DNA from: Haplodiscus bocki
Taxonomy: Eukaryota
Assembly: GCA_965655095.1 (NCBI GenBank)
Contig: OZ296659.1
Location: 30,566,001 to 30,630,000 of the forward strand
Reading direction: 5' to 3'
DNA: 64,000 nucleotides
Shown here piece after piece: positions 29,325 through 50,199 of this stretch. The notes under the pieces were generated by a model, which saw nothing but the letters and a program-made list of their open reading frames with translations, did not search any database and was not told where the DNA came from. Position numbers and translations under genes: made by a program. The first letter of the stretch is position 1, and every line of letters starts with the position of its first letter.

Positions 29325-30931
29325 TTATAATGGGTTAAAACTTGGAAAATTTTGAGTCTTTTCCATTTTGCACGAACACAGAATAAAGGTGAAGAAGGGA
29401 CCTTACGGACCAATCAGCGAGTGATATACCGCAAATTCAAAATTGATCTAGTTTTTTTATGAATCTTCTTTGAAGATACTTTTACTCTAATAAACACTGG
29501 TAGTAGGAACGGCCGAGAAGTTAATTGTTGAAAGTATTCAATTCAGGCTGTGCAAAAGCATAGGATTTTGTTAATTTTATAAACATGGAAATTACTTCCA
29601 TTTGCTTTTCCAACTTGGGTACAATGATTAGTAGGAAGTAGCTAGTAGTGGGGTCACTGGCCAAGTTAAAGTGGGGTTAAAGTTTTGAATTTTATCGGCG
29701 CTGGTTTCCGTGCAATGGTATGGGCATTTCCAAGCTGTGGGAATGTAGGGACTCACAAAATTCGTGTAAATATGGAGATAATTCCAACTTGTGTAAAGGG
29801 GTAAAAGAGGATAGGCTAAGTAGTCGGAGTGAACGGCGAAAATAAAGTTGGGACAGTTTTGAATTTCTAATCGGTTAGTATCCGGAGAGAGTGTGCCTAT
29901 TCGCAGGCTCTAGGAATGCAACGAATTACAAAACTCGCTGGAACAAGATTATTCCAACTTGGGTATAGCGGTTGGGGAACAAGGATTAAATAGTGGTAGT
30001 GACCGGACAATTAAATTTTTTCCTGAACACTTCCATGATTATCTTCTCTCGATCGGGTTCACGTGTTCTGTTGAATTAAAACGAGCTGACAGTAGAGGGC
30101 AAAGTTTCGATAAAAGGTCATTGGTTGCTTACATCAAAGGTCAACTTCCGTCATCCTGTTGTGATCAGCATAACGATTTTTCTAATTTGACGGTCTCAGC
30201 TTCACAGTGAAGATGTTTCAAAATCTTTTAAAAATTTTCCATTCATTGAATCATTTCGAGAAGAGTCCCCATCATAGCTAAAATAGTTTGTTTTCTGCAA
30301 AGTTTGTGGGCTAGTCCTGCGATTCTTACATTTGAGTTAGACGTTGCTATTATTCAATTTTATTCATATTGTCAAATTCGCGTTTCTGAAATTTTTCGAG
30401 CTGGTTCGCTTAATCAATCGAATAAATAGTTCGCTACGGGGCATAATTACTCGTTCCAGATCTTTTGATGCAAACACAACGAATTGAAAATTTTTAATTG
30501 GGTTGGGATGTCAGATTACATATTTGTTGGTTTGTTATGCGTCGACAACATTTACGAAGTTCCGTGGTACCCTCCTGAAGATTCCGACTCAAGGTGCCAA
30601 TCAAAACGGACCTCAGTGGGAGGAAATGCAACTAATAGTGCTATCGTATTTCAACAATTTATGTCGAAATATCACCCGGATGATGATGGCATTGTGCTTT
30701 TACATTCCGCAGTGTCAGATGACCTTTTATCGGAGAAGGCTTTGAATGAGCTGAAGCGTTTAAATATTTCACTCACTTGGTCAAGTTTTATCAAGGGTCA
30801 TATCTTGAGTGAGTCTGTCTGCATTGTGGCTTCGAAATCCGGGTCTAGAACTATTGTACACGACCCAGGGACGATTCCGGAAATCAGTTTCCAGAAACTT
30901 CCGGATGTTGATTGGAACCGAGTGAAATTAT
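29325..30931 (+). repeat. Internally deleted tandem duplicate of 30928-34027
   Basis: 29325-30009 matches 30928-31612, and 30007-30931 matches 33094-34027. Junction microhomologies are TTAT and ACA. Confidence 0.95.
30007..30210 (+). pseudogene. MEPCE: MEPCE 3' fragment (duplicate)
   Basis: TIKFFPEHFHDYL...NLTVSASQ* is nearly identical to the end of 32260-33297; the 5' part was removed by a 1484-bp deletion. Confidence 0.9.
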
Positions 30932-30933
30932 AA
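30508..30933 (+). pseudogene. KHK: Truncated ketohexokinase copy (N-terminal 141 aa)
   Basis: Near-identical to KHK residues 1-141 (3 aa differences). The TAA stop is created exactly at the duplication junction. Lacks the C-terminal GAGD catalytic motif. Confidence 0.88.
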
Positions 30934-32259
30934 TGGGTTAAAACTTGGAAAATTTTGAGTCTTTTCCATTTTGCATGAACACAGAATAAAGGTGAAGAAG
31001 GGACCTTACGGACCAATCAGCGAGTGATATACCGCAAATTCAAAATTGATCTAGTTTTTTTATGAATCTTCTTTGAAGATACTTTTACTCTAATAAACAC
31101 TGGTAGTAGGAACGGCCGAGAAGTTAATTGTTGAAAGTATTCAATTCAGGCTGTGCAAAAGCATAGGATTTTGTTAATTTTATAAACATGGAAATTACTT
31201 CCATTTGCTTTTCCTACTTGGGTACAATGATTAGTAGGAAGTAGCTAGTAGTGGGGTCACTGGCCAAGTTAAAGTGGGGTTAAAGTTTTGAATTTTATCG
31301 GCGCTGGTTTCCGTGCAATGGTATGGGCATTTCCAAGCTGTGGGAATGTAGGGACTCACAAAATTCGTGTAAATATGGAGATAATTCCAACTTGTGTAAA
31401 GGGGTAAAAGAGGATAGGCTAAGTAGTCGGAGTGAACGGCGAAAATAAAGTTGGGACAGTTTTGAATTTCTAATCGGTTAGTATCCGGAGAGAGTGTGCC
31501 TATTCGCAGGCTCTAGGAATGCAACGAATTACAAAACTCGCTGGAACAAGATTATTCCAACTTGGGTATAGCGGTTGGGGAACAAGGATTAAATAGTGGT
31601 AGTGACCGGACAGGTTTTCAATTCTGATCCGAAGTAGTATTCTGGCACGATCCTGGTATCTCTGATGAATTTTTCGTTGAAGTATGCCATGGGTGGCCAT
31701 CTTTCCTCGATTGAGATAAATGCTCTGAAATAAAAGTTTGGTCAAAACATCTCAGAATTCAGCATTGCAAGTTATGTTGCTCTTATTGCGCTGAGAGATG
31801 GCTGTTGAAAACTTTGAGAGATGGCTGTTGAAAACTTTCTAAAAACAAAGTGGTGGCATCAAAACTGAAAACGATGTGGAAGTTGAACGGGTCAAGTGCT
31901 TTGAATTGTTTTAACGCTATTTGCTTCGCTGCATATTCGGTTCTTTGACATACAACTTTTGGTTCAATGCTGCCTCTATACTAGAGGGAAGCTTTATTTG
32001 AATATTGATAGAATTCGCTCGCTCTATTGGAGGGCGGAAGTGTTCGAAGGAATACGCCACGGAAAAACATGTAAATGCCGGCGGTGACGCTGAATGAGAG
32101 TAGATTTATCCGGTTTTGTTATTCGAAAAACCGCAAACGTTTTTTGGGCCTTCATTTCTTTGTATCCCAGCATCTAAAATGATAATGGCTAACTTGGGAG
32201 TTCGTCGTTCTGCAATTTGGTCGTTTTTTAGAAATTGCTTTCTATGACTTGTATTTGTG

Positions 32260-33297
32260 ATGAAGCGAAGAGTTGATATCGAATCTGAAGAGATCCTAGA
32301 ACAACAAAGTCCTTCCTCAGAACAAAATGTGAATGGTACGAACAAAAAGAAGAAAAAAGTGTTCCCCTATGGCAATTACGATCAATATTACGGATACAGG
32401 AACCCTTCAAAATGTGATGATCCCAGACTTCTTTTCATTCCCAAGTGCTGGATCAAACACAAAGCCATTCTCGACATTGGATGCAATACCGGACATTTGA
32501 CCTTATCTTTAGCCAGATCGCATCGGCCTGCAAAAATAGATGCCATCGATATCGATGATCGATTAGTTGGAATCGCTAGACGTAATATTGTTTATTATCA
32601 AAATAAATGTGTCAAGTCTGTCGATTCCAATATCAATAACAATGAGGTAGCTGAATCAGTTGCGAAAGATTCTGAACCCAAGAATGATTTTCAGTTCGAT
32701 TCTATTTCTGCTAAAAACCAGAGAAAACATGGAAGGTCTGATCATGCATTCAACAGTAATGGGTCGTGCAATTTAAGGGGCAGTGCACTTGCTGACGTAG
32801 AAGAAGAAATCGACTGTAAACCTATCCGAGATATTGTAAAATTTACATGCTCTAATTACGCCTTGAAAAGCGATGACTTGCTTGACATGTGCAAAGAAGA
32901 ATATGACGTCATTATGATGCTATCTGTTTCGAAATGGATTCATTTAAATTTTGGCGATGAGTCACTTCGACGTTGCTTTCAGAGAATTTTCCGTCAACTT
33001 CGCCAAAATGGAATCTTTCTTTTAGAGCCACAACCTTTCGACTCGTATCGGAAAAAGAAAAATTTGACTCCCCAAATAGCTATTATTTACCCAACAATTA
33101 AATTTTTTCCTGAACACTTCCATGATTATCTCATCTCGATCGGGTTCACCTGGTCTGTTGAATTAAAACGAGCTGACATTAGAGGGCAAAGTTTCGATAA
33201 AAGGTCATTGGTTGCTTACATCAAAGGTCAACTTCCGTCATCTTGTTGTGATCAGCATAACGATTTTTCTAATTTGACGGTCTCAGCTTCACAGTGA
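32260..33297 (+). CDS. MEPCE: 7SK snRNA methylphosphate capping enzyme (Bin3 family), intronless, 345 aa
   Basis: FPYGNYDQYYGYRNP..DPRL, ILDIGCNTGHLTL (SAM motif I), DAIDID, YDVIMMLSVSKWIHLNFGD, LEPQPFDSYRKK: Bin3 domain signature. Confidence 0.93.
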   Translation: MKRRVDIESEEILEQQSPSSEQNVNGTNKKKKKVFPYGNYDQYYGYRNPSKCDDPRLLFIPKCWIKHKAILDIGCNTGHLTLSLARSHRPAKIDAIDIDDRLVGIARRNIVYYQNKCVKSVDSNINNNEVAESVAKDSEPKNDFQFDSISAKNQRKHGRSDHAFNSNGSCNLRGSALADVEEEIDCKPIRDIVKFTCSNYALKSDDLLDMCKEEYDVIMMLSVSKWIHLNFGDESLRRCFQRIFRQLRQNGIFLLEPQPFDSYRKKKNLTPQIAIIYPTIKFFPEHFHDYLISIGFTWSVELKRADIRGQSFDKRSLVAYIKGQLPSSCCDQHNDFSNLTVSASQ

Positions 33298-33603
33298 AGA
33301 TGTTTCAAAATCTGTTGAAAATTTTCCATTCATTGAATCATTTCGAGAAGAGTCGCCATCATAGCTAAAATAGTTTGTTTTCTGCAAAGTTTGCGTTTTA
33401 TGTGGCCTAGTCCTGCGATTCTTACATTTGAGTTAGACGTTGCTATTATTCAATTTTATTCATATTGTCAAATTCGCGTTTCTGAAATATTTCGAACTGG
33501 TTCGCTTAATCAGTCGAATAAATAGTTCGCCACGGGGCATAATTACTCGTTCCAGATCTTCTGATGCAAACACAACGAATTGAAAATTTTTAATTGGGTT
33601 GGA

Positions 33604-34581
33604 ATGTCAGATTACATATTTGTTGGTTTGTTATGCGTCGACAACATTTACGAAGTTCCGTGGTACCCTCCTGAAGATTCCGACACAAGGTGCCAATCAA
33701 AACGGACTTCAGTGGGAGGAAATGCAACTAATAGTGCTATCGTATTTCAACAATTTATGTCGAAATATCACCCGGATGATGATGGCATTGTGCTTTTACA
33801 TTCCGCAGTGTCAGATGACCTTTTATCGGAGAAGGCTTTGAATGAGCTGAAGCGTTTAAATATTTCACTCACTTGGTCAAGTTTTATCAAGGGTCATATC
33901 TTGAGTGAGTCTGTCTGCATTGTGGCTTCGAAATCCGGGTCTAGAACTATTGTACACCACCCAGGGACGATTCCGGAAATCAGTTTACAGAAACTTCCGG
34001 ATGTTGATTGGAACCGAGTGAAATTATTTCACTTCGAAGGTCGAAATCCAACGAAAGATTTCAACGGGATATCCAAAGTTTATGCCTTGGTTGAATCTGT
34101 GTTAGAGAAGAAGCAGAAAGAAAAACTCAACATTTTTGTTTCTTTGGAAGTTGAAAAATCTCCCGATCGACATATTGGAGTTCAAAAATTGCTGGAACTG
34201 AAGACGGATATGACAATAATCGCGAAAGATTTTGTAATGGGCGTCGGCTTTTATAAAACTGCTGAAAACTTTCTGAAAGATTGGATTGCGAAGGTGGCCT
34301 CCGAGTACGTTGTCGTTACTTGGGGAATGGAGGGAAGCTATGGGTTCGATAACACGACCGGGAATGAAGCGAAAAATATCATTCATGTACCTGCCAATAT
34401 TACCCCGGAGTCCGATGCTGCGGTTGATTCCCTTGGAGCCGGGGATACTTACAATGCGGCCTTGTGTTACAAGATGTTGAATGGATCGCCTTTAGAAGAC
34501 AGTATGAAGTTTGCAGCATTAGTTGCCTCGATTAAATGCAAACAAGTTGGATTGGCAAACTTGAAGTTACCCGGTGTTTAA
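33604..34581 (+). CDS. KHK: Ketohexokinase (PfkB/ribokinase family), intronless, 325 aa
   Basis: VGLLCVD...YPPEDSD.RC, GGNATN, GSRTIVH, FHFEGRN, SLEVEK, VTWGMEGS, VDSLGAGDTYNAA, KCKQVG: KHK-specific motifs. Confidence 0.92.
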   Translation: MSDYIFVGLLCVDNIYEVPWYPPEDSDTRCQSKRTSVGGNATNSAIVFQQFMSKYHPDDDGIVLLHSAVSDDLLSEKALNELKRLNISLTWSSFIKGHILSESVCIVASKSGSRTIVHHPGTIPEISLQKLPDVDWNRVKLFHFEGRNPTKDFNGISKVYALVESVLEKKQKEKLNIFVSLEVEKSPDRHIGVQKLLELKTDMTIIAKDFVMGVGFYKTAENFLKDWIAKVASEYVVVTWGMEGSYGFDNTTGNEAKNIIHVPANITPESDAAVDSLGAGDTYNAALCYKMLNGSPLEDSMKFAALVASIKCKQVGLANLKLPGV

Positions 34582-34868
34582 ATTGGTGTCTCTGTGATAT
34601 TTCCGGGAATATAGAGAAGTGAAAATGAACGATTCGTAAGACTGACATGTGGCGAGAACGGCCGTTAAGGTGCTACGAAACGATTGAAAAACGAGATGAA
34701 TTGCTTCAAATCTATTTGTGAAAAATGCATTGAATGAAATTCATGAACGAATTCAATTATGCAATGTCTGATTTTATTTTTGTTCAAACTACGAATTATT
34801 ATCATACTAGCTAGCAAGGACTGGTTCTTTTCAGAGCAAAATTTTAATCAAGTTTGATTTTGGTTATC

Positions 34869-35007
34869 ATGGCGAGAGGCTACGACTTAACCTGGTTGTT
34901 CTGTGACCACTGTTTCGAGAAGTTGTGCCCTTCTGAAACCGAATTCAAGTTTTACTTCACTAACTGTGGTCACAGATATTGCAAGAAATCTGTAAAAGCT
35001 TTACTAG
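34869..35007 (+). CDS. RNF212: RNF212/Zip3-family RING finger protein, exon 1
   Basis: WLFCDHCF...FYFTNCGHRYC resembles the RNF212/ZHP-3 N-terminal RING. Donor G|gtatga, phase 1. Confidence 0.7.
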
Positions 35008-35842
35008 GTATGAAACAAAATTTTCATTCAACTTTTTTGTGCTTTGAAGCTCCGAATCAAGTTCACCTTGCGCACCATCGTGTATTTACCGATCAATTTT
35101 CATTTCTCTTTGATTTCTATGGATTATCTGATGATAGTTTAAAAATAACTGTTCAAGATAAATTTTTGTGTACCATGTTAAAATGTAGCCAAAGGATTAT
35201 TGAACAATATTCAGTTTCGTTTCAAGAAAGTAGTGCAATGCGATGAATTGCTGCGCCAAAAAATGAAGTGTTAAACACGATAGATGTTTTTGAAGTTTTT
35301 ATGGATCTTTCGACTACTCTACCCTTTAATTATTTTCCGCCCAAATGTGATATGGAAAGAAAAATCATCCACTCAAACGGTGCATTTTTTCTGCGTTTTC
35401 TTGCCAATTGTCCGGGCTCAATCGTCAAAATGCCCAGATTCTGAATTTGAAAATTTTTCATCACCGAATTATAGCAAAGTTGCCGTAGAATCCGACAAAT
35501 AGTAAGATTTTTCAAATACGTACAAAATTTGTTTTTTGAAAAAAAAACATGAATTTTTCAAGATGGAGAAAATATGGGAATTTCGCTGTAAAATGCGTAT
35601 AAAATGATATCATTCCTTGAGAATGTCTTTTCTACCTTAATTGTGAGGTTTTATTGCAAAAAATCAGAATTTGAAAAATTAAAATATATGAATGAAGAGT
35701 ATTTTTTGAAAAAAAAAGCGTTTTCATCCCTTCAAAAGGCATCTTTAACAAAATTGGAGGTCGAAAAAAATGTCGGTGATTGCCCGCCCTCTTGTAAATT
35801 ATACTCAACTCTGCTATAATGTTTTCCTGTTTGTTCAACAAG

Positions 35843-36199
35843 GACGAGAAGGCTCTGTAACCGGCAGCTCAAAATCCAATCAGACTGCTTCGGCGAGAGT
35901 GATTATGCAATGTTTCGTTTGTGCCACTAATTGTCAAGTAATCCAAATCACAAACCAAAACTTCCAAGCATCTCCTATGGCGCAGTTATGTGAGAACATT
36001 GAGTTGGTCAAGAATCGAATGTTCGAAGAGTTGCGCAAGTTGTTTCTCGAAATGAGAGCTGTCGACTGTCAATTGTTTCATTTGCGATTCAAACTTGAAA
36101 CTGTAATGCAAGAGTTGGACGAGGAGCGAAATGTAAGTCAAGTCTTTAGGACTCAGGCCGAGAAAATGGAAGAAGCTTTGAAGAATCACAAACAAAGGG
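35843..36199 (+). CDS. RNF212: RNF212/Zip3-family protein, exon 2 (RING end CFVC + coiled coil)
   Basis: The caag| acceptor keeps phase 1. QCFVCATNCQVIQI completes the RING and a heptad-rich helix follows. Donor G|gttggt. Confidence 0.68.
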
Positions 36200-36683
36200 G
36201 TTGGTATTTTGTTAAGCTGGCAACGCCAGATTATTACGATTGACGTTTTTTTTGACGCACTCAATAATTTACTTGAGCCTGTGTTCGGACGCAAGTTTTT
36301 GATTAGCTGTCAATCATCCACTTCAATTCAGCTGCTTGGAAAATCTTGAAGTCACAGACCTTCATTTTTATACATTATGCAGAAATATTTCAATTTAACT
36401 TCGCATTTTAGACAGATTTTTCTCAACTTCGAATTTTATAGATTTTTTTAGCAAATGAGGTTTCCAAAAGCGATTTTGTTCAACGTAATTGATTGGCTAA
36501 AGATTTATTGTTGGATGATGTCGTGCTGCCAGCTTTTCGAAGCTATGCTTCGCTTCATGCACATTTGCGAATTGAGAGAAGCAAGCGTATTACGGTCGAC
36601 GTGCCCCTTTTTTCGACTCAGTAAAAACGAGATTTTTCCGAAATTCTGAAACCTTCCAAGATTTGAAAATTTTCATTTGAAAT

Positions 36684-36746
36684 GGGTTCGAAGCCGCAAC
36701 TTGTGATTCCGGAAGCGTTGGGACTACCGATTGCGCCACCTAATCC
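36684..36746 (-). mobile_element. tRNA-derived SINE head / tRNA pseudogene
   Basis: Minus strand reads GGTGGCGCAATCGGTAG...GCGGCTTCGAACCC: A box and near-perfect B box at tRNA spacing. Confidence 0.55.
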
Positions 36747-39700
36747 GGAGAGATTGCGGACATTACTCGTATACTTTACGACTGCGTTTCTTGCGGATTT
36801 TTTTCTGAAATTTTAATCTAATATGATTTCCTAGATGCTGGCATTGCGATTGTGACCGTTTTATAACTTATTTGGATCTTACTAGTTGCATTTTTTATCG
36901 GTGAAAAAGGCTGCATTTTTCAGATTTCTCGAAAAATCGTTTTGTTGTTGGATATGCTTCTACATGCGTCAATTGTTAAAACCGTTTTCGTCACTGACTA
37001 GTGATCGGATGGAGCCAATCCAGCACTGATTCAGTTACTCGTGCAGTTGTTCCGCGGCGTAGATTGGAAAGTCTGCTTTCAGATGTTAATGCGGAAACGT
37101 TTGACTTGAAGGTGAATCATTTAAGAGCGTTGAAGAGAACCATAAGATCGTTTCTATCTGTGACCGTTAGTGGTGTTTACTCCATCTAGTGCTGTTGCAT
37201 TAAATTACCTTGTAGAGGTTTTGCGGAGTTGCTTGGATATTCTGTTTCATGGTTACATTGCGAAAAATTTCGAATATTTGAAAACTTGGAGTTTTTTTCG
37301 TTGTTCGTTATGATAGATAATATCATTGATAAATGGTTGTATTGGGTCCATCTGCTGCTGCTTTAACTGTTTGAAAGCCTTTGAACTTTACGGAATGGCT
37401 CGGAGTGTTTATATTGTATTTTTTCCTATAAGTCTTGAGTTGTTTTGAAAAACCGATGTTTTTCTATAGCTAAATAAAACAAATGTCTTCTTTGAGCATC
37501 TGTCGGATGGGGATGATCCATCGCTAGTTCAAACAGCCACCACGGTCTAAACGTGCTATGAAGTAACTTGATTGTCGTCTATAGTTCTTTCGCGAGAAAT
37601 TTTAACTTTAAATTGAAGATGGTTTTTCTTTCTTTGCTTGCTAGAATCGTTTTTGTCAATAATTGTTAAGCGGATTAGGCAGCTCCTGCATTTCTCCAAC
37701 TGCTTGCGGCCTAGAGCTGTTGTAAGTCAGCTTGGATAGTCTGCTTTCTTATTTAATATTGCAAACAAATTCCATTTGAAATTGAAGATGTTTTCACTTG
37801 CGTTGTTCGTGAAATATGGTTTTCTTACAACAGTTTTGCGTACGCTTTGGTGGCTTTAAATATTCCCTTTTGGGACTTTAATTAAAGATACAGGAAGTAT
37901 TTTTTGTACTTTTGGTTTTGAGAATTTTAGCTTGTATTTGAGAAATCTAAGGCTCTTTCTCGCGTCGGTCGTGTTTTTTTCTGGCCAGCTGTTTGATTGC
38001 CCCTTTGAGTTGTGCTGCGATTCCCCTTTGCTGCGAAGTTTTGCGAACCAGCAGAGGCTAATGATTTCGAATTTTGTCCTGCTCAATGTCTGACGTTTCG
38101 AATGGAAAATTCAAGAGCTTTTATCTTGAGGGTTTTGTCGAAAGATTGCTTCTTGGTGGTTTTTCGTCAGATTGTGGGCCTCCAACGCCTCAAGAGTTAA
38201 TGGAGTATCAGAGATTTTCTTTCGTGAAGTTCCGCTTGTCACCTTTTCCAAGAACACATTTTAGCACAATTGCTGCGCTGTTCTGTCATTTTGCTGACTG
38301 AGGCGTTTCTTGACGCTGTACTATTTTCATTCAGGTCGCACCGCTCCTATTGCGCAGTTATCTTTTTTATTCGGAATGCAACAATAGCACGTTTTTAAGA
38401 CAGAGGAAATCTGATGTTTTCATCAAGAGTTGTGTATTAAGTATGTGTGCGAAAGTTGTGTCAGTCAGTTGAAATCTTTTTTCGGTTGCTTTCTCGGTGT
38501 TCTGAATTCTTTTTCCTGTAGGAAGTTGTACCGCAAGTGTCGGCGAAAAACAGCTTCGCTTCTGTGTTACACTTTCCACTAATTAGTGCTATGAAATAAG
38601 AGCCTTTTTTCCGAACGATTTAAAAGTTGCGTCGGTTGTTCACAAACACGGTTGTTGAAATTTTCTGGGAAATTGGACTTCGCTTGCTTGCTTGGTTGGC
38701 GGGCATCTTTGCGAAAGCGGCGATTAAATAAGTGAAGAGCAACTGAACCGGAAGAAATTTAATAGTGACCTAAGGGCTTATTTGGATTGCTTCGTTTCGG
38801 TTAGTTGAGTCGACAGTAAATATTGTTGCGTCTTTTCGAAAGTTGGTTTTTCGGAAGCGACAGATTCCATCACGGCAATCCAGTGCTGATTCGAGAGACC
38901 GCAATTGGGCACTTGGTTGGGAAAAAAAGCAGAGATGTGCCGTTTCATTCTTTTCTTGCGAAATATCCTGACCTGCACTCTGATAATGGAAGCCTTTTTG
39001 TTTGTTTTTCAGCGTTCTTTTCAGGGACTACCGATTCGATTAGGGTGCTCATTCGAAACCGCGTAAAGTAGAATTTGAGGAGAAGCCGGAAGGACCGCCT
39101 TCAAACATTCCAGGTGTTACTTCTTAAGGCAATCCAACGCTTTTTCAAAAGCAATCAATGTGTGAGGTCCGCGAAGTATGGTTTTACTATGGAACTCGAA
39201 TTTTTTTGGTTCAATATTTACCCATCCGATTACAGCTGTCCACTGATCAATTGTAAGTTTGAATATGTGCAATCTGTTGAGAAGCCTGAATGCCCCGATT
39301 TATACCTTCCTCGTGAAATTTCTTGAGTTTTAGTTTGAGTTCCGAAAACATTTTATTTACGTCCTTCTCAGAATTGTTTGTCTCGAAGACTACCCAGTCG
39401 ATTTCGACCATCCAGTCCTCAATTGAAAGAAGGCAATGTATGGACTTGCGAAGGAGTCAGGATATTCTATATCGAACCTTTGTTACCAAATTTCCTGAGT
39501 TTTTGTTGAGACAACTTCAAAATTTTACAACATCTTCGTCCAAAGATGCTTTTCTCGCAGACTATTGGTTTAACTGAGGGCATTCGGTCGCCACTCAGAA
39601 GCTCAGAATTTGGAAAATGCAGAGAAGCAGGAATGGCCTGTTTCCTTCATTTGATACTTTTTACATGAAGTCTTTCAACTTGTTATAAGTATTTCGATTA

Positions 39701-40874
39701 TGTATAGATTGTCTTCTTTGCTGCTATGAAAGACTATGGGTCGCATTGGAACAATCCGGCGCGTATTCAAAACCTTGTGTCGTAGAAATTCTGCTGGGAC
39801 TGAAGATCTCCTGTACCCAGCTTTTCACGCAAAGTTTTTTGACTTGTAGTTTGAATTTAGAAAATATTTTACTTACCTATTTTTCCAATATAGGTTTTAC
39901 CTAGACTATGGGTGAAATTTCGGCCATCCAGTGATCTTTCAAAAGCCCTCATTATGGGGATTCTTCGACGAAACAGGGATGTACTGTTCTTCTCGTTTCA
40001 CTCGAATTAATTTGACGATCACTTGCATCTGTTTTAAGTTGTTTTTTTTTCTCAAAGATTGTTGACTGGATTGCGGCCATGCGGTGTTCATTTGACAGCC
40101 TGGAAAATGCAGAGTCTACGAAGAAGCATGATAATGCTGTTTCATATGATTAATATTTTAAACATGATTATTTTGACGTTTTTTAGTTTGAATAAAAAAT
40201 TAAATGCGTGTTTTTTCAAAGTTGTCTCTCTCAAACACTTCCGTTTGAATTGTGGCTCATTGAAAAACTTACATTGTCTAGAGTTTTCAGTGAAACTGGA
40301 GTTACCCAAGTAATACTTTTTACTCAAAATTTTTTGACTAAAGGTTTTACTCTCGATTATCGGTTGGCCATCCATTTGTTAATTTGAATCCTTATAATTA
40401 GGATTGATTTTGAGCAGCTATATTTTCCATCTGCTTTCCAGGGAACCGTAATTGCTTCTATGAAAGTTTTCAGAGAATCAATTGAATGGTTTTTGTCGAT
40501 CGGCAGTTCTTGGATGCCATTTCTTACCTTCGTCGCAAGTGTATGCGACGCCCACCTTCGCCTCTGTGTAAGAAAATGTGGCGTATATATGTTGTTTTAC
40601 CGCACCAAATCTTTTTACGCATTAAGTGAAAGCCTGATATCGCTTGCTTTTACTTTCTTCATCGCTGTTGTCACGCTGAGTTAGCGAAAGAAGCAAATGA
40701 AATTCGGGGCGATAAAAAAATCTATCCAAGTTTATTTTTGGAACGTCCTAGATGTTAAATTCTTTCTTTCCGGCTACTTCACCTAAGCTAGTAAATGTCG
40801 CTATCTACTTCATGTAATCTAACTTTTTTTGTGAAAATTTATTGTTAGAGTTTTGCCCTTCACATTGATTACAG

Positions 40875-40983
40875 CAGCAAGCAACGAAGTGAAAATTGAA
40901 GAGTGGCAGCGAAAATACCAAATAGCAGTAACTGAGTTGTCCAAAGTCAAGAGATCTTTGCTGAACACTTCCCAGAACTCCGG
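40875..40983 (+). CDS. RNF212: RNF212/Zip3-family protein, exon 3 (coiled coil)
   Basis: ttacag| acceptor in phase 1; ASNEVKIEEWQRKYQIAVTELSKVKRSL; donor GG|gttcgt in phase 2. Confidence 0.6.
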
Positions 40984-41232
40984 GTTCGTATTTCGTTGCA
41001 AAATTTTGTTGAATGCAACAGTAAACGCAGTTGGCAATGCGACGGTATTCCATAAAAGTTGTTCTTTTCTATAGCATTCATGTACTCGCCTTTAAAAGTT
41101 TCGGATCGGACGAAATTGAATTCAAAGTAACTTATGGGTTTCAAAATACCTAAATTATGGCCAAATTAAGGATGTCCATGCGTTCCAACAAATTTAATCA
41201 GATGAATGAGAATGTATGATTGCCTTTTGCAG

Positions 41233-41539
41233 ACTTCATCGAGAAATTAGACAAGGAGAAAGATTAGTTGGTGTGGCAGCGCCTTTAAATGCACCCTTAC
41301 AAGCACCCGTCGCTTCTGTAGTATCAAGAATTGGAGAAAGTGAAACTGGATCTGCCAGAGCGCGTACTCCAAATGCACCGCGACATAACACGGAGAATCA
41401 GTTGAATGAAACCAGGGCCTCCTTTTTGTCTAACCCACATGGTAGTGCTAGGGGAGGTGAAGCAGGATCCTCGAGTAGCCGAAGTAGAAATATAGATTAT
41501 AAAAAGCGACTAGAAAACTTCTTCAGTTCTGCAAACTGA
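41233..41539 (+). CDS. RNF212: RNF212/Zip3-family protein, exon 4 (S/P/R-rich disordered tail; total 303 aa)
   Basis: ttttgcag| acceptor in phase 2. The four exons sum to 912 nt as an open frame ending TGA. Confidence 0.6.
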
Positions 41540-41892
41540 GTTACTTTGCCCTAAAAATCAAATACATTCTGCTTTGGAATTTAAGCGCTACATTTTATAC
41601 TTTTTATAGGATAGGAGTTTTAAGCTTCTTAAGAAGCAGCATTGTCAGATAGTTCTGGCTGCTGCAAAAGTTTCGGCATTTTTTGAGCTATGTTTACTGA
41701 TGACTGTTTATAAAAATTTTAATGTTTTCCTTGCCAATACTTAATTCGTATTTGTTCAGTCTAGATTTTTAAATATTAATGTAGTCACGCCTCAATCTGT
41801 ATGTTAACTTGAAAGGTCTTTTCAGATGAGATATAGTATTGGTGATTAATCAGTTTCCAGTCAAAAGTCTTTCCAAAAGGTATGGTGTGAGA

Positions 41893-42084
41893 ATGTTCAA
41901 ACTGAGTCGATGTGCCGATACTGGTAATCTGGAATGGGTTGTTAAGGAAAATGGGGATGATAATATGGAAGAAGAAATTGCACTTTCTACGTATGGTGAC
42001 ATGCTACATGATAAGGAAAGAAATGACAAATATGACGAAGCAATACAAAATGCAGTTTCTTCGCTGAAGATGGCCGGACAAAAA
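41893..42084 (+). CDS. PRMT7: Protein arginine N-methyltransferase 7, exon 1
   Basis: TGNLEW...EEIALSTYGDMLHDKERNDKY...AV...GQK matches the PRMT7 N-terminus. Probable GC donor AAA|gcaagt. Confidence 0.9.
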
Positions 42085-42249
42085 GCAAGTAAATAACCTC
42101 TACCTTTTCTGCTGTCACATGGGCAGTTTTCAGCAAATCTACAACAGGACAAAAAACAGCCCTTTCCTCTAATTTGATTTTCCAAAAAGCGGCGGCTTTT
42201 GGATTTTTCAGCCTATCAGTTTTCCGATGCAAGTAACAAAACCGGAAAT

Positions 42250-43800
42250 AGACTTTACCAATTCAATTTATACTGGAAAGAGCTGTCCAAAGACGCCTTG
42301 ATGCAAAGAATTCAGCGGAAAGTTCTTGTTGAAAAATGTTTGATTTTGGAAAAAATTGTCACATGTCGTAGTTGCGAAGGAAAACGAATATAGAATGTTA
42401 GCGTCCAATGATTTTACAAGTAGAAGCAGGCTTTGAGTCCTTGATAAAAGAAATCCAGAGAGGTTTCTTTAGAAAATTGAGTATGAATATCGAAAAAAAT
42501 TGATACTAAGGACATTTTTGGGCTGTTCAGCTCATCACGATTCCGATGCAAGTGACGAAACCTGACATTTACAGGAGGATACCTTTTAAAAAGTTGAAAA
42601 ATCGATTGAAACATTTCTAGTTGAGGACTGTCGTTGTGTAAGACATTATTGATTGAAAAATCCGGTAGTTGTGGACAAATTCTCTTCGAATGTCGAGAAG
42701 TAAGTACTAATGCAATTTTCGGCTTTTTCGGTCTCTTGAGAAATTTAATGCAATGCACAAAATCCCAGATTGTAGTGTTGAAGATCCTTTTAAGATATGC
42801 AAAAAAAACTCTCGACTCAGACGATAATTGGAGACAACCAAACCGTTAGTTTGAGAGAAAGTTGATTTTGGTAATTTAGATAAGTCAAGGCTGATGGCAA
42901 CTATTGGCTTGTTCGGCATTTCAGGATTCCATTGGAATGATCGAAATCGGATTTTTTGCGTTGAATTCTTTTCGGCAAGTTTGAAATTACTCATTGGGGC
43001 TTTGGAGAACGAAATCAAGCCGGTGGCTTTGGAGGAATGCGAGTTTGAAGCTCGCGAAAATTAACTAATGCAAGTTTTTTTTTCGGCGTTTCCGGGCTGA
43101 GAATTCGCATGCATTGATCCAAATAGTCGTTTGAATGACTTTCAGCAAGTTGAAAGCATATTTAAGTTGTTGACAGGCCAAATCAAACCGAGGGGTTTGG
43201 AGAATGCTGAAGGTCGAGAAAAGTGCGTACTGAAGTCAACTTTCGCGTTGTTCGATCTATCAGGATTGTAATGCAATGATAAAGACCAAGCTGTTCTGTG
43301 TTGAATGCTCTTTAATAAGTGGAAAACTGTCGATTGAGGCATTTTAGGCAGAATTTCAGGCAGTAGTCTGGGGAAGTTGTGAGGTAAAAATTGAGAGTAG
43401 TCATTACTACTGCCAATTTTTGGTATTTCGGTCTATCAGCATTCCTATGTAGAGCGGAAATTCCACATATTGAGTGTTGATTGACCCTTCTACGTGTCAA
43501 AAGCTGTTAGTTGAGACAGTGACAAGGCATCCAGCAGGCAGAGTTACAAAAGAATGTCAAAACCTCAGCATTTCGACTGAAGGTATTGAGGATCAGGCGG
43601 AAAAGTATTCGTGCTCAGTTGTTTTTGTTCTTTTGGAACCCGACAGAGACCATGTTATGTTTATAAGAAGTTTTCTCCCAAGTTTTGCCAATAGTTCATT
43701 GTTTAGTTCTTCTAATCGTATTGATTAGTTTGTTTATGGAGTTTTTCAAAGAAAACTTTTCCTCAAGTTTTTGGATTGTTGCTCAAGTCAAGCTGTTTGA
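42250..43800 (-). mobile_element. Ancient decayed APE-RT LINE in PRMT7 intron 1
   Basis: Minus-strand traces parallel the 16.5-18 kb ORF2 in order: RLILNTFS, ADRP, YSQFLPHNF/PDYCLKFCL, FRSF, TSRH. Very degenerate. Confidence 0.4.
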
Positions 43801-43942
43801 TATTGCCGAAAAAATTCATATTCGAGATGTTTTAGCAGAAGAAGCTAAAACAACTTCAAGAAAAGAAAATAGATCCTTCTGGTGCGTTGAAGTTATTTTT
43901 TCAGTCGTAGTTTTTAAAAAAACGCGAAATACTTCAAGGCGG

Positions 43943-44010
43943 GTCCTAGTGGGTATCGAACCCGAATCGTTGTAGTTTGACGCCCCTCTCGCCTCTTTCG
44001 ATTCATCACT
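43943..44010 (-). mobile_element. Possible tRNA-derived SINE remnant
   Basis: B box GGTTCGATACC on the minus strand (43952-43962); the A box is weak. Confidence 0.3.
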
Positions 44011-44750
44011 TCACTAAGGAAGCCAGGTGGTACCTCAGTTGAGTTGATGCTTTGACGCAGGCGGAATTGCAAGCGAATGGAGAAAAAAGTCAACATACTG
44101 AGGGAATGATTTTCTTTACCCAATATATTACGCCGGAAAAATATTGGGACGGGATTTTTTTGCTTTCCAACTGTTAGAAAATGCGTTTTTTAGGGAAGCT
44201 ACCTTTTAGTATGTCTGCAGCACTTTTTATATTTTTTCTCATTCAAAAGTTTTCACTTTTTTGAAAGAAACGTAACTTTTCGTCGAGAAAAATTTTATGA
44301 AATTTCGCGTTTCTTCAAACATTCCGCGGAATATTTACCACATTTTCCTATTTTTAAATAGATCAAGTTTTTCGAAAAATTTTCTTCAATTAAACCCTAT
44401 TTTTGATTTAACTGGTTGTAGAATAATTTAACCCCAATTGAACCGCTGGACAATTTTGCGACCTTCAGAAAAACTGAAATAATTCGCAGCTGATAATGTG
44501 CCAACTACTTTTTTCTGGTAGGTGAACAATAGTGCTTTGAAAGGTCTGTTTTGATCTGGTGGATACCTTCAGCCGCCTTCTCCATAATTTTTTTTGCTGT
44601 GGCCGCTTCGCACCTATTCGGCGTTGCGGTGGCCCGTTATGTAGGGTTGGTAACAACAGCGAATTTTGGGTTCCTACGGACAAGGCATAATAGGTATGGT
44701 CTGATTCAAGGTTGTACTGTCCTGGGGCAACCATATTGGAAAGAAATGTC

Positions 44751-45165
44751 TGTCACGATACCAATCATACATAGTACATCAAACTTTTCGCTCTACCCAA
44801 AAAGAACAAACATGGACCTATGACAACTCTGACCCTTTTGCAGAACAGCACGATGCTAAGCGTGTTTAGTGAGCGACAGAAGCACAACGCGGAAAAACAG
44901 CCTAGCAGAAAACTCCTCCTCAGAGTAACGCTCGAGAAAATATCTGACTTCTCGATTCTCTTGACGTCAGTCGTTTAAAGTATGATAGTTCCTCTTACTT
45001 TTCTGCCTCCCTCAAGAGATTTTTTGGAGAGAACATTGTAGCACTCTTCTGTAATACAGAGAAATGCTAAGCCGTAGAAGTGACTTTCGTTAATACTACG
45101 CCTTCTCACATAACTAACATAAAAATATTCGACATGATATGACATTGCCATATGACATGGTGACA
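44751..45165 (-). mobile_element. LTR-like segment (415 bp)
   Basis: Bounded by inverted TGTCAC...GTGACA and lies just downstream of a minus-strand gag-like remnant. No TSD or partner LTR seen; orientation is inferred from the gag. Confidence 0.45.
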
Positions 45166-45175
45166 GGAGAGGGCC

Positions 45176-45233
45176 GGTGTCATAGTATGGTGACCACGGT
45201 GGTGTCATAGTATGGTGACCACGGTGGTGTCAT
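45176..45233. repeat. Perfect 25-bp tandem repeat (2.3 copies)
   Basis: ggtgtcatagtatggtgaccacggt twice, plus ggtgtcat. Confidence 0.95.
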
Positions 45234-45239
45234 CTGAAT

Positions 45240-46300
45240 CCGCTTTTTTGAAGGAATTAACTGCGGTATCGGATTATGTTGCTGAACATTGTTCTGGGTC
45301 GAGTATAGGGTGCTTGTTAAAGGAGGAGGTTGGCAATTCCGAGGACGAAACCAACTATATGGAGCTGCCTGTCTTTTTACAAACCCGACAATAGCGTTGT
45401 GATGATTGAGTATGTCGCTGACTCTGATTGCTGGGTTGAGATTTTTGCCTTTTAATGTTGTTGTTTTTGCGCCAGTTGTGATTGTTTCTAAGCCCATTTT
45501 GCTGATTTTTGCAATTTTGGTTGTTTCCACAAGAATTCAACTGGAGATTTTTGTTGTGATTTTGCTGGCGATTTTGTTGCTTTTGGTTAGTAAGTCGAGT
45601 TAGATTGTTCTCGTCCGCTGATTGAGGGCAGGTTGCAATTGCTTACTCAAGTTTTGGAGTATCTTGCGCTTGAGAGTGCTTGGATGCCAGTTAAAAGACC
45701 TTTACTGGTTTTGGAACTAACTTCATTGAAGTCGTTGCCATCATTTTCTGTGCACAACTTGTCAATTATCTTACTGGCGTCTTTTGAATACAAATCTTCT
45801 TTTGTTGTCTCTTCTGGTAGTGTCAGCAGACTTCCCAATTCCGTAGGAATGACGTCTATGAATGATTCTCTGACAAGTTTGTTGCACTCTTGTGATGTAT
45901 CCTCTGCCGCAACAACTGGTCGTCTACCTTCAGCTGCACTTGGTTCTCTAATTTCGTAAGCTTCCAAGGCCAATCGCTGGAGACAGGAGGAAGTCCTGAA
46001 CATTCTTTTCTGATGGTTTCAATATGCGCGCCGTGAAGAGAAGTTTTTGCAGTTGGACACGTTTTTCGGTGCACAATCCAGTAACTGTCTCCTCGTGTAG
46101 CTGCGGGCTTCTGCTCAAAACCTGTCAGAATACCTCCCAGATGAAGATATTGATATCGGCCTCCTGTAGTGCCAGCAGTTTGAATGAAGCTTTCGAGCTG
46201 GCGAAGGGAATTCGGTGAAATTTGAGATCTCTTTTTCCGCGCCCTTGAAGGGTTGCAAACTAACAAAGCGTTGGATCGCAGCTCTTGATGATTTTTGGCA
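45240..46300 (-). mobile_element. Gypsy-like gag remnant
   Basis: PFKGAEKEISNFTEF[fs]LRQLESFIQTAG...YQYLHLGG (capsid-start-like), then an N/Q-rich linker and YCRVCKKTG (decayed zinc knuckle). Confidence 0.5.
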
Positions 46301-47959
46301 GAGAGCTACTGGACAACATCTTGTGGAGTGGAGCATTTCTGAGCATCATAGGTAAAGATATCGAGTGCATGAGCAGTTCACTTGTATAGATTTGTTAGAG
46401 TTTTTGCCGGAAAATGAATTTCTCAACTGCAGACGTTAAAGTGCCGCTTTGAACTCTAATGCTGTTCGAGTTGGACAAATTAACAACAGACTGTGAAAAA
46501 TTTAGCATGCTAAAAAATATAAGTTTGTGGAGAACTGATTCGGAATTTGAAAAAATGGTTGGCTGTTTTACAGCAGCGCTAGATCATTTGGGCTTTAAGG
46601 TCGAAATGGTGCAATTGGCAAGTGTACATTTAGAAACACACGTAGTGAGAGGATTACTTTCCTTCCATATTTGTATGGATGGAAATGAAACCCTTTGCAA
46701 TGACTGGAAGTTTTTGCGATTTTTTTCCAAATGTCTATTCAGAGCATTTTTCGAATCTCGAACTGCATATTTTGGAAACTTCTTCGAATTGATATTTTTT
46801 GGCTCCGAAAAATTTGAAAATCTGTGAATTTTGGAGTTGAGCATGGTTACAGCAGGTTGCAGTAATTTTTCATTTTCAGGTATCTTGTTTTATATGGAAA
46901 GAAAAGTTATTCAATGGCTGGTGGTGTTTTTCTGTTTTTTTTTTCGGACGCATTCTGCCAATTTAGAGTTCTCACTAAGAGTTCGTTCACTCCTATTGAT
47001 CATTTGTGCACTTCATATTCATAACTATCTTTCACTGTTACCACGATAAGCAAATTTCCATGCAGCAGTTGTTTCTATTTTGCCAAATTATATAATGAGA
47101 CTACTTACTATAGCAGTTCTTCACAACAATCTGTTTTTCTTGCCATGGAGTAGGTTTTTTGGAAATAAAATTCGTAATTTTGAAGTTTGACGGCGTATTG
47201 TTCATTTTTTATTATACTTAAACTCCAAAGTTGCCGTAGAAGGCCATTACTATACCAGTTTTTCTCAAAATTTGTTGTCCTCGCATGAATTCAGGGCTTT
47301 TGTTTACTAAAATTCAGGGAAAAGTTACATTGTTTTTTGAGTTTAAGGCAAACTTTCTTTTTTTTGACATTTTTGGGTTCAAATTACATTTTTAGAAACG
47401 TTAGTTCCCTAGTTTGTGATACAAAAATTATCCCAGAGTTTGCCGGGCGTCTTATTATTTTTCGTCGAAAAAATTATTACGTAAAAAATATTCAATTCAG
47501 TACTGGGCGTCGGCTGTTTTTTCTTTCCTGAAATCGCCCATGACCTTCAGACTTTATTGCACAGCCATTAGTACCTTGTTTAATACAAATATATGGCGTC
47601 ACCATGGTTACGAAGCCAAAGATGGCGGGTTCGCATCCTGCTATCCGCCATTTTTTTCTACTTATTTCCAAATACTCGTTAACCCATTCTTATTTTGTAA
47701 TACCAGAAAGCAGATTTTTTTCGACAAAATTGAGGGTTTTTTGATAAGTAGGCTTTTTTTCTCGAAAATTATCCATTTACCAATTTAACTGAAGCAAATC
47801 GGCATTTCTGATTTTTCAATAAATTGAAAAATTGATTTTCCAAATAAAGCCGAAAAAAGTGGAAAGTTTATAAATCGGTCAAAAAATTCAACTAAAATTG
47901 TATTTGAACTTTTTTTCAGTTTTTCGGTATTAGTTTTTTTCACTACCCTAGTTTCTCCG

Positions 47960-49800
47960 GGGTCAGAAAAGGAGATGTCACTTCGAAGATACTTCTACTG
48001 GAACATGTTCTGTGATCCCCAGCTTGAGAGAATACCGAAAAGCGCAATTATTATTGAATTTCCTCTAAGTTGCAACTCACTTTTCTCCAACAATACAAAG
48101 CTCAATTCTTTCATTTAGGTCTCAATCCCAATCGTTCTTCTTGTAGAAGAGCACTCTTTTAAAAAGTCGGTGGTTTTATGCCTGGCGTCACAAACCCCGT
48201 AGTCCGGAAATTCTGAAAAATGCCATCGTTTTTGATAAATCTCATTGTCCGAACTGAATTTTCTCAGCAACTCCAGGTTCATCAATTGAAAGTGTTACTC
48301 CTGTAGAGGAGGATTCAATTAAAAAACCATTGATATTGATCCTTGCATCAAATTTTTTATAGTCGAAAATCTTCAGAAAATTGTTTTTGAAAATGATTCA
48401 TCTCGATTATCGAAATGGTGTTTCTCCGTAACTACAGATTTGATTTTCTTCATGAGGGTCACAATCGAAAACCTTACAGCTAGAAAATAGGACTGAGTTG
48501 GAATTTTAGTCAGTTGGTTCTTTGCATCGATGTTCGGACAGTCCCGAAAATCTAAGGGTGTTTTTTTGTTGACTTATGTTGAAATTCAAACTCATATTTC
48601 TCTGTAGCTACAGGCTCAATTTCTTCCAGGGTCTCAATCGAATGCTCGAAACTTGTTAAGTATTATTCAATTTCATTCTTATCTTCGCTTCAGTTTTCTG
48701 GTAGTCCGAATCTTCCAATTGTGCTAATGATTTTGATACATCTCCCTATTCAGTCTCATATTTCTCTCTAACTACACGCTTATTTTTCCGTCAAGGTCTC
48801 ACCCGATCATTTTTTATACTTTACTTGCGGCGGAGAATTGGATTTAGAAGTTGCTTTTTGTGCTCCTTGGATTAGAATTGTGATAGTCCGAAAATTCAAA
48901 TGCGCTATCAGTTTTGATTCATCACCAGATGCAAACTCTCTTCTCTGTAACTACCAGTCTAATTTCCTTTATGAAAATCTGAATCGGCAGACTTTTAGTT
49001 GCAGATGTAATTTGGCTTCTAAGAGCAGAGATTTTTTTGTTTGTCTTGGAATATGGTTAGTTCAAGAATGCCAACCAACTAATGATTTTGACAAATTCCA
49101 TTTATTAGTTCTCCATAACCTCTGACTTGACTTTTGGCTGCAAGATTTCAATCTCTGGTTTTTTTGGTAGACTACTCAGTTTGATCATTATTGAATTCGT
49201 TCCTTGCGCCGCAATCCTGATAGTCCGAGAATGTCAAAAATGCTCCCAATATTGAAAGATCGCTTCATTCAAAGTCATGTATCTCCTTAACTACCGGCTT
49301 GATTTATTTCACCCAATGTCGCAATCGAAAACTCCCTATTCTTGGAGGAATTGTGAATTGAAATACTATGAAGCCTGATCCTGCATTGAATTCGTTGTTT
49401 TGAAATCCCCAGAAGTTCTTATAATCTAATAATCTGGACTCGATCTGATACATCTCGATTTTCAAACTCGGTTTTGTCCAAAAATACTGAATTGAGTTCT
49501 TTCTTCAAGGTCTCCATCTTCAGTTTTCTACTTTTGCTGGATAATTCCATTAAAAAGAGTTTTTTTTATGCATTCTGGTCTGAGTGACCAGAATTGAGAG
49601 AAATTGCTGTTAGTCTTGACATGCCTCAATAATCCCTCTATTTCTTCAACTCTGCCTCTTTCGTTTTTCCTTCAACTTGTCAGTCGATAGCTTTTTACTT
49701 GAAGCAAACTGTTCCTTCCTAAAAGTTTTGAAATTTGATTTTTACATCGGACTTGGGGTCTTCATTGACCAAAATGGCAAAAGTTCTATTAGTGTTGAAT
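47960..49800. repeat. Decayed tandem repeat, units alternating ~160 and ~180 bp
   Basis: A tagtccgaaaat-like marker recurs at ~48200, 48360, 48540, 48702, 48884, 49038 and 49221; ctgtaactac-like motifs recur with it. Confidence 0.7.
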
Positions 49801-50199
49801 TATCTTGACATTCCAACTCGACCTTCTCGAAAACAACATTTTTGAATTCGTCTATCGATGTCTGAATTGGCGGTGAATCTTTTTGAATGTTTCTTAGATG
49901 GAACAATTTCTGACTGTGTCCCTTAGGTTGGAATGTTGATAAGCTGAACATGCAAAAAGTTTCAATTCTTCAATTAATGTTGTTAGTATGTCGATTTTCA
50001 AGCTGATTAATGTTAAAGCAATCGGGTTGAATTCTTTCAATAAGGTATCCATGGAGATGCTTTCGGTCATTTTTGGCTTAGTTTTAAAAATTTGTTGTTG
50101 GTTCGACAGTTTTTTACCCGCCACAAGACGGAAAATATCGCAGTGCTACTGCGCTTTTTGTTCAAAATTCGTCGAGTTTGAAGATCAGCTCTGTTTCAG

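What the first reader, a model, noticed from the sequence alone, without database searches (positions are those of the whole stretch)
32260..41900. Candidate trans-spliced operon: MEPCE-KHK-RNF212L-PRMT7 (possibly EXOSC5 to USO1)
Seen: six functionally unrelated genes all lie on the + strand. Stop-to-ATG gaps are only 306 nt (MEPCE-KHK), 287 nt (KHK-RNF212L) and 353 nt (RNF212L-PRMT7) and show no recognisable TE, while the large introns of this cluster are 4.7-8.1 kb and packed with TEs. Each ATG is preceded by an acceptor-like site with no obvious donor: cgttccag (33555), ttcttttcag (34834), tcttttcag (41825) / gtttccag (41860), also ttttcttttaag (19556) and gttttttag (32231). An AATAAA (33517-33522) sits ~33 nt before the KHK acceptor, as expected if 3' cleavage and trans-splicing are coupled. 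Known: SL-resolved operons occur in nematodes, tunicates and flatworms. Inference: polycistronic transcription resolved by spliced-leader trans-splicing.
Basis: partly seen in the sequence, partly recalled or inferred. Interest (0 to 1): 0.8.

Follow-up and report, generated by a model that had tools for sequence, protein, structure and literature searches.

The report
Candidate acoel operon, RNA untested
Four to six unrelated housekeeping genes sit head-to-tail in an acoel worm genome, each with a conserved splice-acceptor site just before its start codon; this fits spliced-leader trans-splicing and perhaps an operon, but no RNA data could be reached to test co-transcription.

Summary
MEPCE (Bin3), a ketohexokinase-like PfkB kinase, an RNF212-like RING gene and PRMT7 lie on the + strand. 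EXOSC5 lies upstream and USO1 downstream. The stop-to-ATG gaps are 306, 287 and 353 nt, and every listed acceptor and the AATAAA are at the stated coordinates.

The genome is an acoel. [quoted passage not shown]

New here:
- A related acoel keeps the same gene order and strand.
- That species keeps an acceptor just upstream of each ATG in all five genes.
- The KHK block TTCCAGAT..ATGCAAAC is invariant in three species.

Against the operon reading:
- In that relative only the MEPCE-KHK gap stays short (219 nt). The other two gaps are 1.7 and 1.9 kb and repeat-laden.
- C. macropyga and a further species have none of the other cluster genes within 10 kb of MEPCE.
- The AATAAA is not conserved.

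The decisive test failed. All four sequencing runs that hold the region are DNA, and protein look-ups returned only genomic contigs. SL acceptors are therefore plausible, but polycistronic transcription is untested (about 0.45). If true, it is a new member of a known kind. First-stage notes flag similar candidates elsewhere in this genome.

The parts
19545..19556 (+). Acceptor-like site ttttcttttaAG, 10 nt upstream of the EXOSC5 ATG (19567)
   Evidence: The relative has catattttAG 9 nt upstream of its ATG.
19567..19899 (+). EXOSC5-like exon 1 (RNase_PH). Exon 2 is about 28038-28423, after an 8.1-kb intron.
   Evidence: Pfam. Homology to L002. Exon ends are inferred.
29325..31612 (+). Polymorphic tandem duplication. 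The 685-bp units 29325-30009 and 30928-31612 are 99.7% identical. They flank a 96% copy (29988-30931) of the MEPCE 3' end + spacer + KHK 5' half.
   Evidence: Absent in contig L001 and present as extra units in L004.
32224..32231 (+). Acceptor-like site ttttttAG, 28 nt upstream of the MEPCE ATG
   Evidence: The relative has tttttcAG, also 28 nt upstream of its ATG.
32260..33297 (+). MEPCE/Bin3 methyltransferase gene, single exon
   Evidence: Pfam Bin3 8e-31. 47% identical to C. macropyga 7SK capping enzyme-like.
33517..33522 (+). AATAAA, 33 nt before the KHK acceptor
   Evidence: Kept in the paralogous copy but absent from the relative's spacer.
33550..33571 (+). KHK acceptor TTCCAG|AT plus the conserved leader ATGCAAAC, which starts a short uORF. 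The AG ends at 33555.
   Evidence: Invariant 8-mers in three species at the same distance from the ATG.
33604..34581 (+). Ketohexokinase-like PfkB kinase gene, single exon
   Evidence: Pfam PfkB. Homologues. A frameshift allele at 34121 occurs in another haplotype.
34825..34834 (+). Acceptor ttcttttcAG, 34 nt upstream of the RNF212L ATG
   Evidence: The relative has ttttctttttcAG 45 nt upstream of its ATG.
34869..41539 (+). RNF212-like RING gene. Exon 1 is 34869-35009, an exon lies at about 40874-40985, and the last exon is about 41233-41539.
   Evidence: Weak zf-RING_5 hit. Exons match L002. Boundaries are inferred.
41817..41825 (+). Acceptor tcttttcAG|AT, 67 nt upstream of the PRMT7 ATG. A second site, gtttccAG, ends at 41860.
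   Evidence: TTTTCAGAT is kept in the relative 57 nt upstream of its ATG.
41893..52968 (+). PRMT7 gene. Exon 1 is 41893 to about 42097, and the large last exon ends at 52968.
   Evidence: Pfam PRMT_C. Homology to L002/L003.
56536..60219 (+). USO1/p115 gene, internal exon plus large exon. The first coding exon was not located.
   Evidence: Pfam.. 84% match to L003.

Best explanation
This is a conserved, co-oriented cluster of housekeeping genes in an acoel worm genome. Each gene carries a functional 3' splice acceptor 10-67 nt upstream of its start codon. The most likely reading is that these are spliced-leader (SL) trans-splice acceptors.

I infer that transcription starts upstream of MEPCE and runs through KHK, and probably on into RNF212L and PRMT7. 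The upstream mRNA would be cleaved and polyadenylated, and the SL would be spliced onto the next acceptor a short distance downstream. That would yield capped monocistronic mRNAs, as in flatworm, nematode and tunicate operons.

Shown: gene identities, order, strand and gap sizes; single-copy state of two gaps; conservation of order and of the acceptors in a second species.

Inferred: that the acceptors take the SL, and that there is one promoter.
For: - Gaps of 306, 287 and 353 nt between six co-oriented unrelated genes. They sit in a genome whose introns here are 5.9-8.1 kb and hold high-copy repeats.
- The stop-to-acceptor distance is only 253-285 nt, and this must also hold the upstream 3' UTR.
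- An acceptor sits upstream of the ATG in all five genes in the window and in the related species. The rest of each spacer is unalignable.
- TTCCAGAT..ATGCAAAC is invariant in three species.
- A 9-10 nt leader behind the EXOSC5 acceptor in both species requires a spliced-on 5' exon.
- Gene order and strand EXOSC5>MEPCE>KHK>RNF212L>PRMT7 are kept in the relative at 56-82% protein identity. MEPCE-KHK is only 219 nt apart there.
- SL trans-splicing affects 30.2% of genes in the acoel S. roscoffensis (PMC9911081).
- In the flatworm M. lignano, operon gaps peak near 100 bp once repeats are subtracted, and repeats commonly inflate them (PMC8629364).
Against: - There is no RNA evidence of any kind. 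All four runs are DNA, and no transcript-derived protein or contig was found.
- In the relative, the KHK-RNF212L and RNF212L-PRMT7 gaps are 1725 and 1935 nt.
- None of the other cluster genes lies within 10 kb of MEPCE in C. macropyga or a fourth species.
- The AATAAA next to the KHK acceptor is not conserved, and the other two gaps have no canonical signal.
- In haplotype L004, about 3.2 kb of duplicated units lie between the intact MEPCE and the full-length KHK copy.
- Most SL-trans-spliced genes in other animals are monocistronic, so SL acceptors alone do not make an operon.
Confidence: 0.45

Rival explanations
1. The genes are independent and closely packed. Each has its own compact promoter in the gap or overlapping the upstream 3' UTR, and each is SL-trans-spliced as a monocistronic transcript, with a short outron removed at the conserved acceptor.
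For: - SL trans-splicing is common in acoels, and most SL genes elsewhere are not in operons.
- Two of the three gaps are 1.7-1.9 kb in the relative, so tight spacing is not required.
- None of the other cluster genes lies within 10 kb of MEPCE in C. macropyga.
- An ATTGG (reverse CCAAT) 9-mer, TCTATTGGA, lies about 190-240 nt upstream of the MEPCE ATG in both species. This shows promoter-like motifs can sit close to these genes.
- The duplicated unit carrying spacer + KHK 5' half is repeated in L004.
Against: - Only about 15 nt lie between the expected MEPCE cleavage site (after AATAAA at 33517) and the KHK acceptor.
- No conserved blocks other than the acceptor-proximal ones were found in the three gaps.
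- Three consecutive ~300-nt gaps are unusual beside multi-kb, TE-filled introns.
Confidence: 0.33
2. The acceptors are ordinary cis-splice acceptors of 5'-UTR introns. Each gene, or several genes sharing one leader exon, starts with a non-coding exon further upstream, and no SL is involved.
For: - Known donors of this locus are weak (GTTGCT, GTATGA, GTTCGT). 'No obvious donor' therefore cannot be judged from sequence.
- A first-stage note on another piece of this genome raises a shared leader exon as an alternative (s1-376630).
Against: - For KHK the whole leader exon, intron and promoter would have to fit in 258 nt or lie inside MEPCE.
- SL trans-splicing is documented for acoels, and follow-up notes report SL-headed LINEs in this genome.
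Confidence: 0.15
3. The layout is chance. The acceptor-like motifs are AT/pyrimidine-rich noise, and the short gaps have no functional meaning.
For: A single acceptor-like site occurs within 70 nt of a random position with p = 0.12-0.29.
Against: - All five sites recur in a second species at similar or identical distance, and the KHK site in a third.
- Six genes on one strand has p of about 0.03.
Confidence: 0.05

Closest known systems
SL-resolved operons of the flatworm Macrostomum lignano (PMC8629364) and of nematodes and tunicates
   Same: - Co-oriented, functionally unrelated, mostly conserved housekeeping genes.
- Gaps of a few hundred nt.
- An acceptor just upstream of each downstream ORF.
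- Gaps inflated by repeats in one species.
- A host lineage that trans-splices about 30% of its genes.
   Different: - No RNA evidence here for SL addition or a polycistronic precursor.
- The host is an acoel (Xenacoelomorpha). My literature searches found SL trans-splicing for this group but no description of operons.
- There is no sign of a specialised SL2-type leader or a U-rich element.
SL trans-splicing in the acoel Symsagittifera roscoffensis (PMC9911081)
   Same: - Same animal order.
- 30.2% of genes are trans-spliced.
- Gene boundaries in that annotation were split using SL and poly(A) peaks, which implies that closely abutting SL genes exist.
   Different: - That paper does not mention operons.
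- Its 32-nt SL is not present in this window, as expected for an SL gene located elsewhere.
- The window's species is not identified.

Membership tests
SL trans-splicing-resolved eukaryotic operon | The host organism performs SL trans-splicing | not testable with these tools
   Published for the acoel S. roscoffensis. Earlier follow-up notes report an SL RNA gene and SL-headed LINEs in this genome. I confirmed only the acoel affinity.
SL trans-splicing-resolved eukaryotic operon | Two or more co-oriented genes with short intercistronic distances | tested here: met
   Gaps are 306, 287 and 353 nt stop-to-ATG. In the relative the gaps are 219, 1725 and 1935 nt, and the long ones are repeat-laden.
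SL trans-splicing-resolved eukaryotic operon | A 3' splice acceptor upstream of each downstream ORF without a cis donor | tested here: inconclusive
   Acceptors are present and conserved across species. Absence of a cis donor cannot be judged, because known donors here are weak.
SL trans-splicing-resolved eukaryotic operon | SL sequence on the mature mRNAs of the downstream genes | not testable with these tools
   No RNA run holds the region. Runs X1-X4 are DNA.
SL trans-splicing-resolved eukaryotic operon | A single promoter and a polycistronic precursor spanning the gaps | not testable with these tools
   No RNA, CAGE or chromatin data are available. Only genomic contigs were retrieved.
SL trans-splicing-resolved eukaryotic operon | Gene linkage maintained in related species (typical, not strictly defining) | tested here: inconclusive
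   Order and strand are kept in one related acoel. None of the other cluster genes lies within +-10 kb of MEPCE in C. macropyga or a fourth species.

The most novel reading that the evidence does not exclude
This would be a true polycistronic transcription unit of at least MEPCE-KHK, and possibly four to six genes, resolved by SL trans-splicing. It would be an operon documented gene by gene in Xenacoelomorpha, kept in at least two acoel species. The KHK cistron would additionally carry a conserved upstream ORF immediately behind the trans-splice site.
Probability: 0.4. Interest if true: 0.5.

Novelty: new member of a known kind. Interest (0 to 1): 0.35.

Why it matters
If confirmed, it would add acoels to the animal groups that package unrelated genes into SL-resolved operons. 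That bears on how often operons arise once SL trans-splicing exists. It also affects gene annotation in these large, repeat-rich genomes, where fused or split models are a risk.

It is not surprising to a specialist. SL trans-splicing is already published for an acoel, and operons accompany it in most SL-using animals. First-stage notes flag the same pattern at many other places in this genome, so a single genome-wide RNA analysis would settle all of them at once.

Tried and rejected
1. Reads: the only runs holding the region (X1-X4) show flat ~35-45x depth over exons, spacers and intron, and thousands-fold depth over repeats. They are therefore DNA and give no 5' leaders, joints or polycistronic evidence.

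2. Transcript contigs by exact-protein and cluster look-ups for MEPCE, KHK and PRMT7: only ENA genomic contigs came back, and no Logan RNA assemblies. Word searches with MEPCE, KHK and the KHK N-terminus gave no transcript-derived acoel proteins. The one short hit, L009, contains the sequence upstream of the acceptor, so it is not an SL-spliced mRNA.

3. The published S. roscoffensis SL is not in the window, whole or as its first 17 nt. This is uninformative for the claim.

4. AATAAA-acceptor coupling as evidence is rejected as a general feature. It occurs at one gap only and is not conserved.

5. Deep synteny is rejected. None of the other cluster genes lies within 10 kb of MEPCE in C. macropyga or species C.

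6. KHK as a horizontally acquired gene hitch-hiking on MEPCE: the tree puts the acoel pair on a very long branch outside both the animal KHK clade and the bacterial PfkB clade, so this is undecided.

7. ncRNA or tRNA genes in the gaps: none found.

8. Bacterial-type promoter and terminator scans were not used, because they do not apply to an animal genome.
Full report
**What is there.**
The window is AT-rich animal DNA (36-44% GC).
- Bin3/MEPCE at 32260-33297.
- A PfkB kinase at 33604-34581. Its best named relatives are vertebrate ketohexokinases at 27-30% identity.
- A RING exon at 34869-35009 (weak zf-RING_5 hit).
- An RNase_PH exon (EXOSC5-like) at 19567-19899.
- PRMT7 (PRMT_C) ending at 52968.
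- USO1/p115 at 57169-60219.

All are on the + strand. MEPCE and KHK are single exons. The stop-to-ATG gaps are 306, 287 and 353 nt. Every acceptor-like site and the AATAAA sit at the coordinates given.

**Which organism.**
The best named relative of the MEPCE protein is the 7SK capping enzyme of the acoel Convolutriloba macropyga (47% identity). Closer unnamed relatives sit on long ENA contigs. Earlier follow-up notes of this scan also call this genome an acoel with an SL RNA gene and SL-headed LINEs. I did not test those notes.

SL trans-splicing is published for the acoel Symsagittifera roscoffensis, where 30.2% of genes are trans-spliced. That paper never uses the word operon. My searches found no paper describing operons in Xenacoelomorpha.

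**The decisive test could not be done.**
The only public runs that hold the region (X1-X4, one study) cover exons, spacers and intron at an even 35-45x. They cover an intronic repeat at 2000-5000x. They are DNA, not RNA.

Exact-protein and cluster look-ups for MEPCE, KHK and PRMT7 returned only genomic ENA contigs. Three word searches found no transcript-derived acoel proteins.

What the DNA reads do show is that the MEPCE-KHK and KHK-RNF212L gaps are single-copy, while the RNF212L intron holds high-copy repeats.

**Comparative evidence.**
A related acoel (loci L002 and L003) keeps the order and strand EXOSC5>MEPCE>KHK>RNF212L>PRMT7. Protein identities to the window:

| Gene | Identity |
|---|---|
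| MEPCE | 63% |
| KHK | 67% |
| PRMT7 | 56% |
| EXOSC5 exon 2 | 82% |

The spacers are essentially unalignable between the two species. Yet each gene keeps a strong acceptor just upstream of its ATG:

| Gene | Window: acceptor and leader length | Relative: acceptor and leader length |
|---|---|---|
| EXOSC5 | cttttAAG, 10 nt | attttAG, 9 nt |
| MEPCE | ttttttAG, 28 nt | tttttcAG, 28 nt |
| KHK | TTCCAG, 48 nt | TTCCAG, 49 nt |
| RNF212L | ttcttttcAG, 34 nt | ttctttttcAG, 45 nt |
| PRMT7 | tcttttcAG, 67 nt | cattttcAG, 57 nt |

For KHK the block TTCCAGAT..ATGCAAAC is invariant in three species, including a short contig from a further species (L009). It begins a short upstream ORF. These are the only positionally conserved 8-mers in that spacer.

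A random 70-nt stretch holds an acceptor-like site with p = 0.12-0.29. Five out of five sites, twice over, is unlikely to be noise. A leader of only 9-10 nt behind the EXOSC5 acceptor needs an exon spliced onto it. I take these sites to be real acceptors.

**What weakens the operon reading.**
- In the relative only MEPCE-KHK stays tight (219 nt). KHK-RNF212L is 1725 nt and RNF212L-PRMT7 is 1935 nt (about 1590 nt in L003). Both are filled with dispersed repeats and a polymorphic 347-bp insertion. In M. lignano, repeats likewise inflate operon gaps. This is therefore compatible with an operon, but it removes 'short gaps are conserved' as an argument.
- In C. macropyga and a fourth species MEPCE is also intronless with an acceptor near the ATG. 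KHK, RNF212L, PRMT7 and EXOSC5 are not within 10 kb of it.
- The AATAAA 33 nt before the KHK acceptor has no counterpart in the relative. The other two gaps have no canonical signal.
- EXOSC5 ends 3.8 kb before MEPCE. The stretch upstream of MEPCE shares a reverse-CCAAT 9-mer with the relative about 190-240 nt from the ATG. If there is an operon, it more likely begins at MEPCE.
- Known cis donors at this locus are weak (GTTGCT, GTTCGT). The absence of obvious donors in the gaps therefore proves little.

**Structural variation at the locus.**
Upstream of MEPCE the window carries a tandem duplication. Two 685-bp units, 99.7% identical, flank a 96% copy of the MEPCE 3' end, the spacer and the KHK 5' half.
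- Contig L001, from the same ENA sample, lacks this duplication.
- Contig L004, also from that sample, has two extra units between the intact MEPCE and the full-length KHK copy. They push MEPCE and KHK about 3.5 kb apart.
- L004 also has a 1-bp deletion at 34121 that shifts the KHK frame. The same deletion is seen in contigs of runs X2 and X4.

The deletion of the MEPCE 5' part from the extra units lies between 22-bp direct repeats (31591-31612 and 33074-33095). This fits repeat-mediated loss. The changes are at the DNA level and are not retrocopies of a dicistronic RNA.

**Verdict.**
Given the published biology of acoels, they are most simply SL acceptors.

Whether the genes share one promoter is untested. 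I put about 0.45 on an SL-resolved operon covering at least MEPCE-KHK. I put about 0.33 on independently transcribed SL genes, about 0.15 on cis-spliced leader exons, and about 0.05 on chance.

If true, it is a new member of a known kind. A single RNA data set would settle this candidate and the many similar ones that first-stage notes report elsewhere in this genome.

Noticed in passing
window 29325-31612; L001; L004: A polymorphic tandem array holds a 1.6-kb unit: the upstream region of MEPCE, the MEPCE 3' end, the spacer and the KHK 5' half. The window has one extra unit upstream of MEPCE. L001 has none. L004 has two extra units between MEPCE and KHK. The MEPCE 5' part was lost from the extra units between 22-bp direct repeats (31591-31612 and 33074-33095).
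   Followed up: partly
window 34121: A 1-bp deletion in an A-run shifts the KHK reading frame in contig L004. It is also carried by contigs of runs X2 and X4, so a disrupted KHK allele appears to segregate in the sampled animals.
   Followed up: partly
window 33564-33593: A short upstream ORF starting ATGCAAAC (M-Q-T...) lies 8 nt behind the KHK acceptor. Its first eight bases are invariant in three acoel species. The uORF has 9 codons here and 4 in the other two species. ATGCAAAC also resembles the octamer motif ATGCAAAT.
   Followed up: partly
window 32244-32276: An out-of-frame upstream ATG lies between the MEPCE acceptor (32231) and the main ATG (32260). It opens a 10-codon ORF that overlaps the start codon.
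   Followed up: no
window 14837-14853 and 14866-19400: A + strand LINE (endonuclease and RT ORFs) ends under 200 nt upstream of the EXOSC5 acceptor. Just before its first ORF lies AAAAAGTTAATAAATAG, followed by tttttcag. This 17-mer is 3 mismatches from the 3' half of the published S. roscoffensis SL. The 5' half of the SL is absent, so this may be chance.
   Followed up: no
window 33604-34581: The KHK-like protein sits on a very long branch outside both the animal ketohexokinase clade and the bacterial PfkB clade. No C. macropyga orthologue appeared in the search. Its origin (fast-evolving animal gene or acquired gene) is undecided.
   Followed up: partly
window 35294-35794: A stretch in the first RNF212L intron has read-contig depth of 2000-5000x, against about 40x for the flanks. 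Many alternative joints are seen. It is a very high-copy repeat family.
   Followed up: no
window 1500-5450: A roughly 2.9-kb unit is repeated in tandem (near-identical ORFs at 1537-2399 and 4461-5322). The first 14 kb of the window contain no recognisable host gene.
   Followed up: no
L002 15582-15928: A 347-bp insertion is present in L002 but absent in L003, in the RNF212L-PRMT7 gap of the related species. It contains a tRNA-like stretch, suggesting a SINE-type insertion polymorphism.
   Followed up: no
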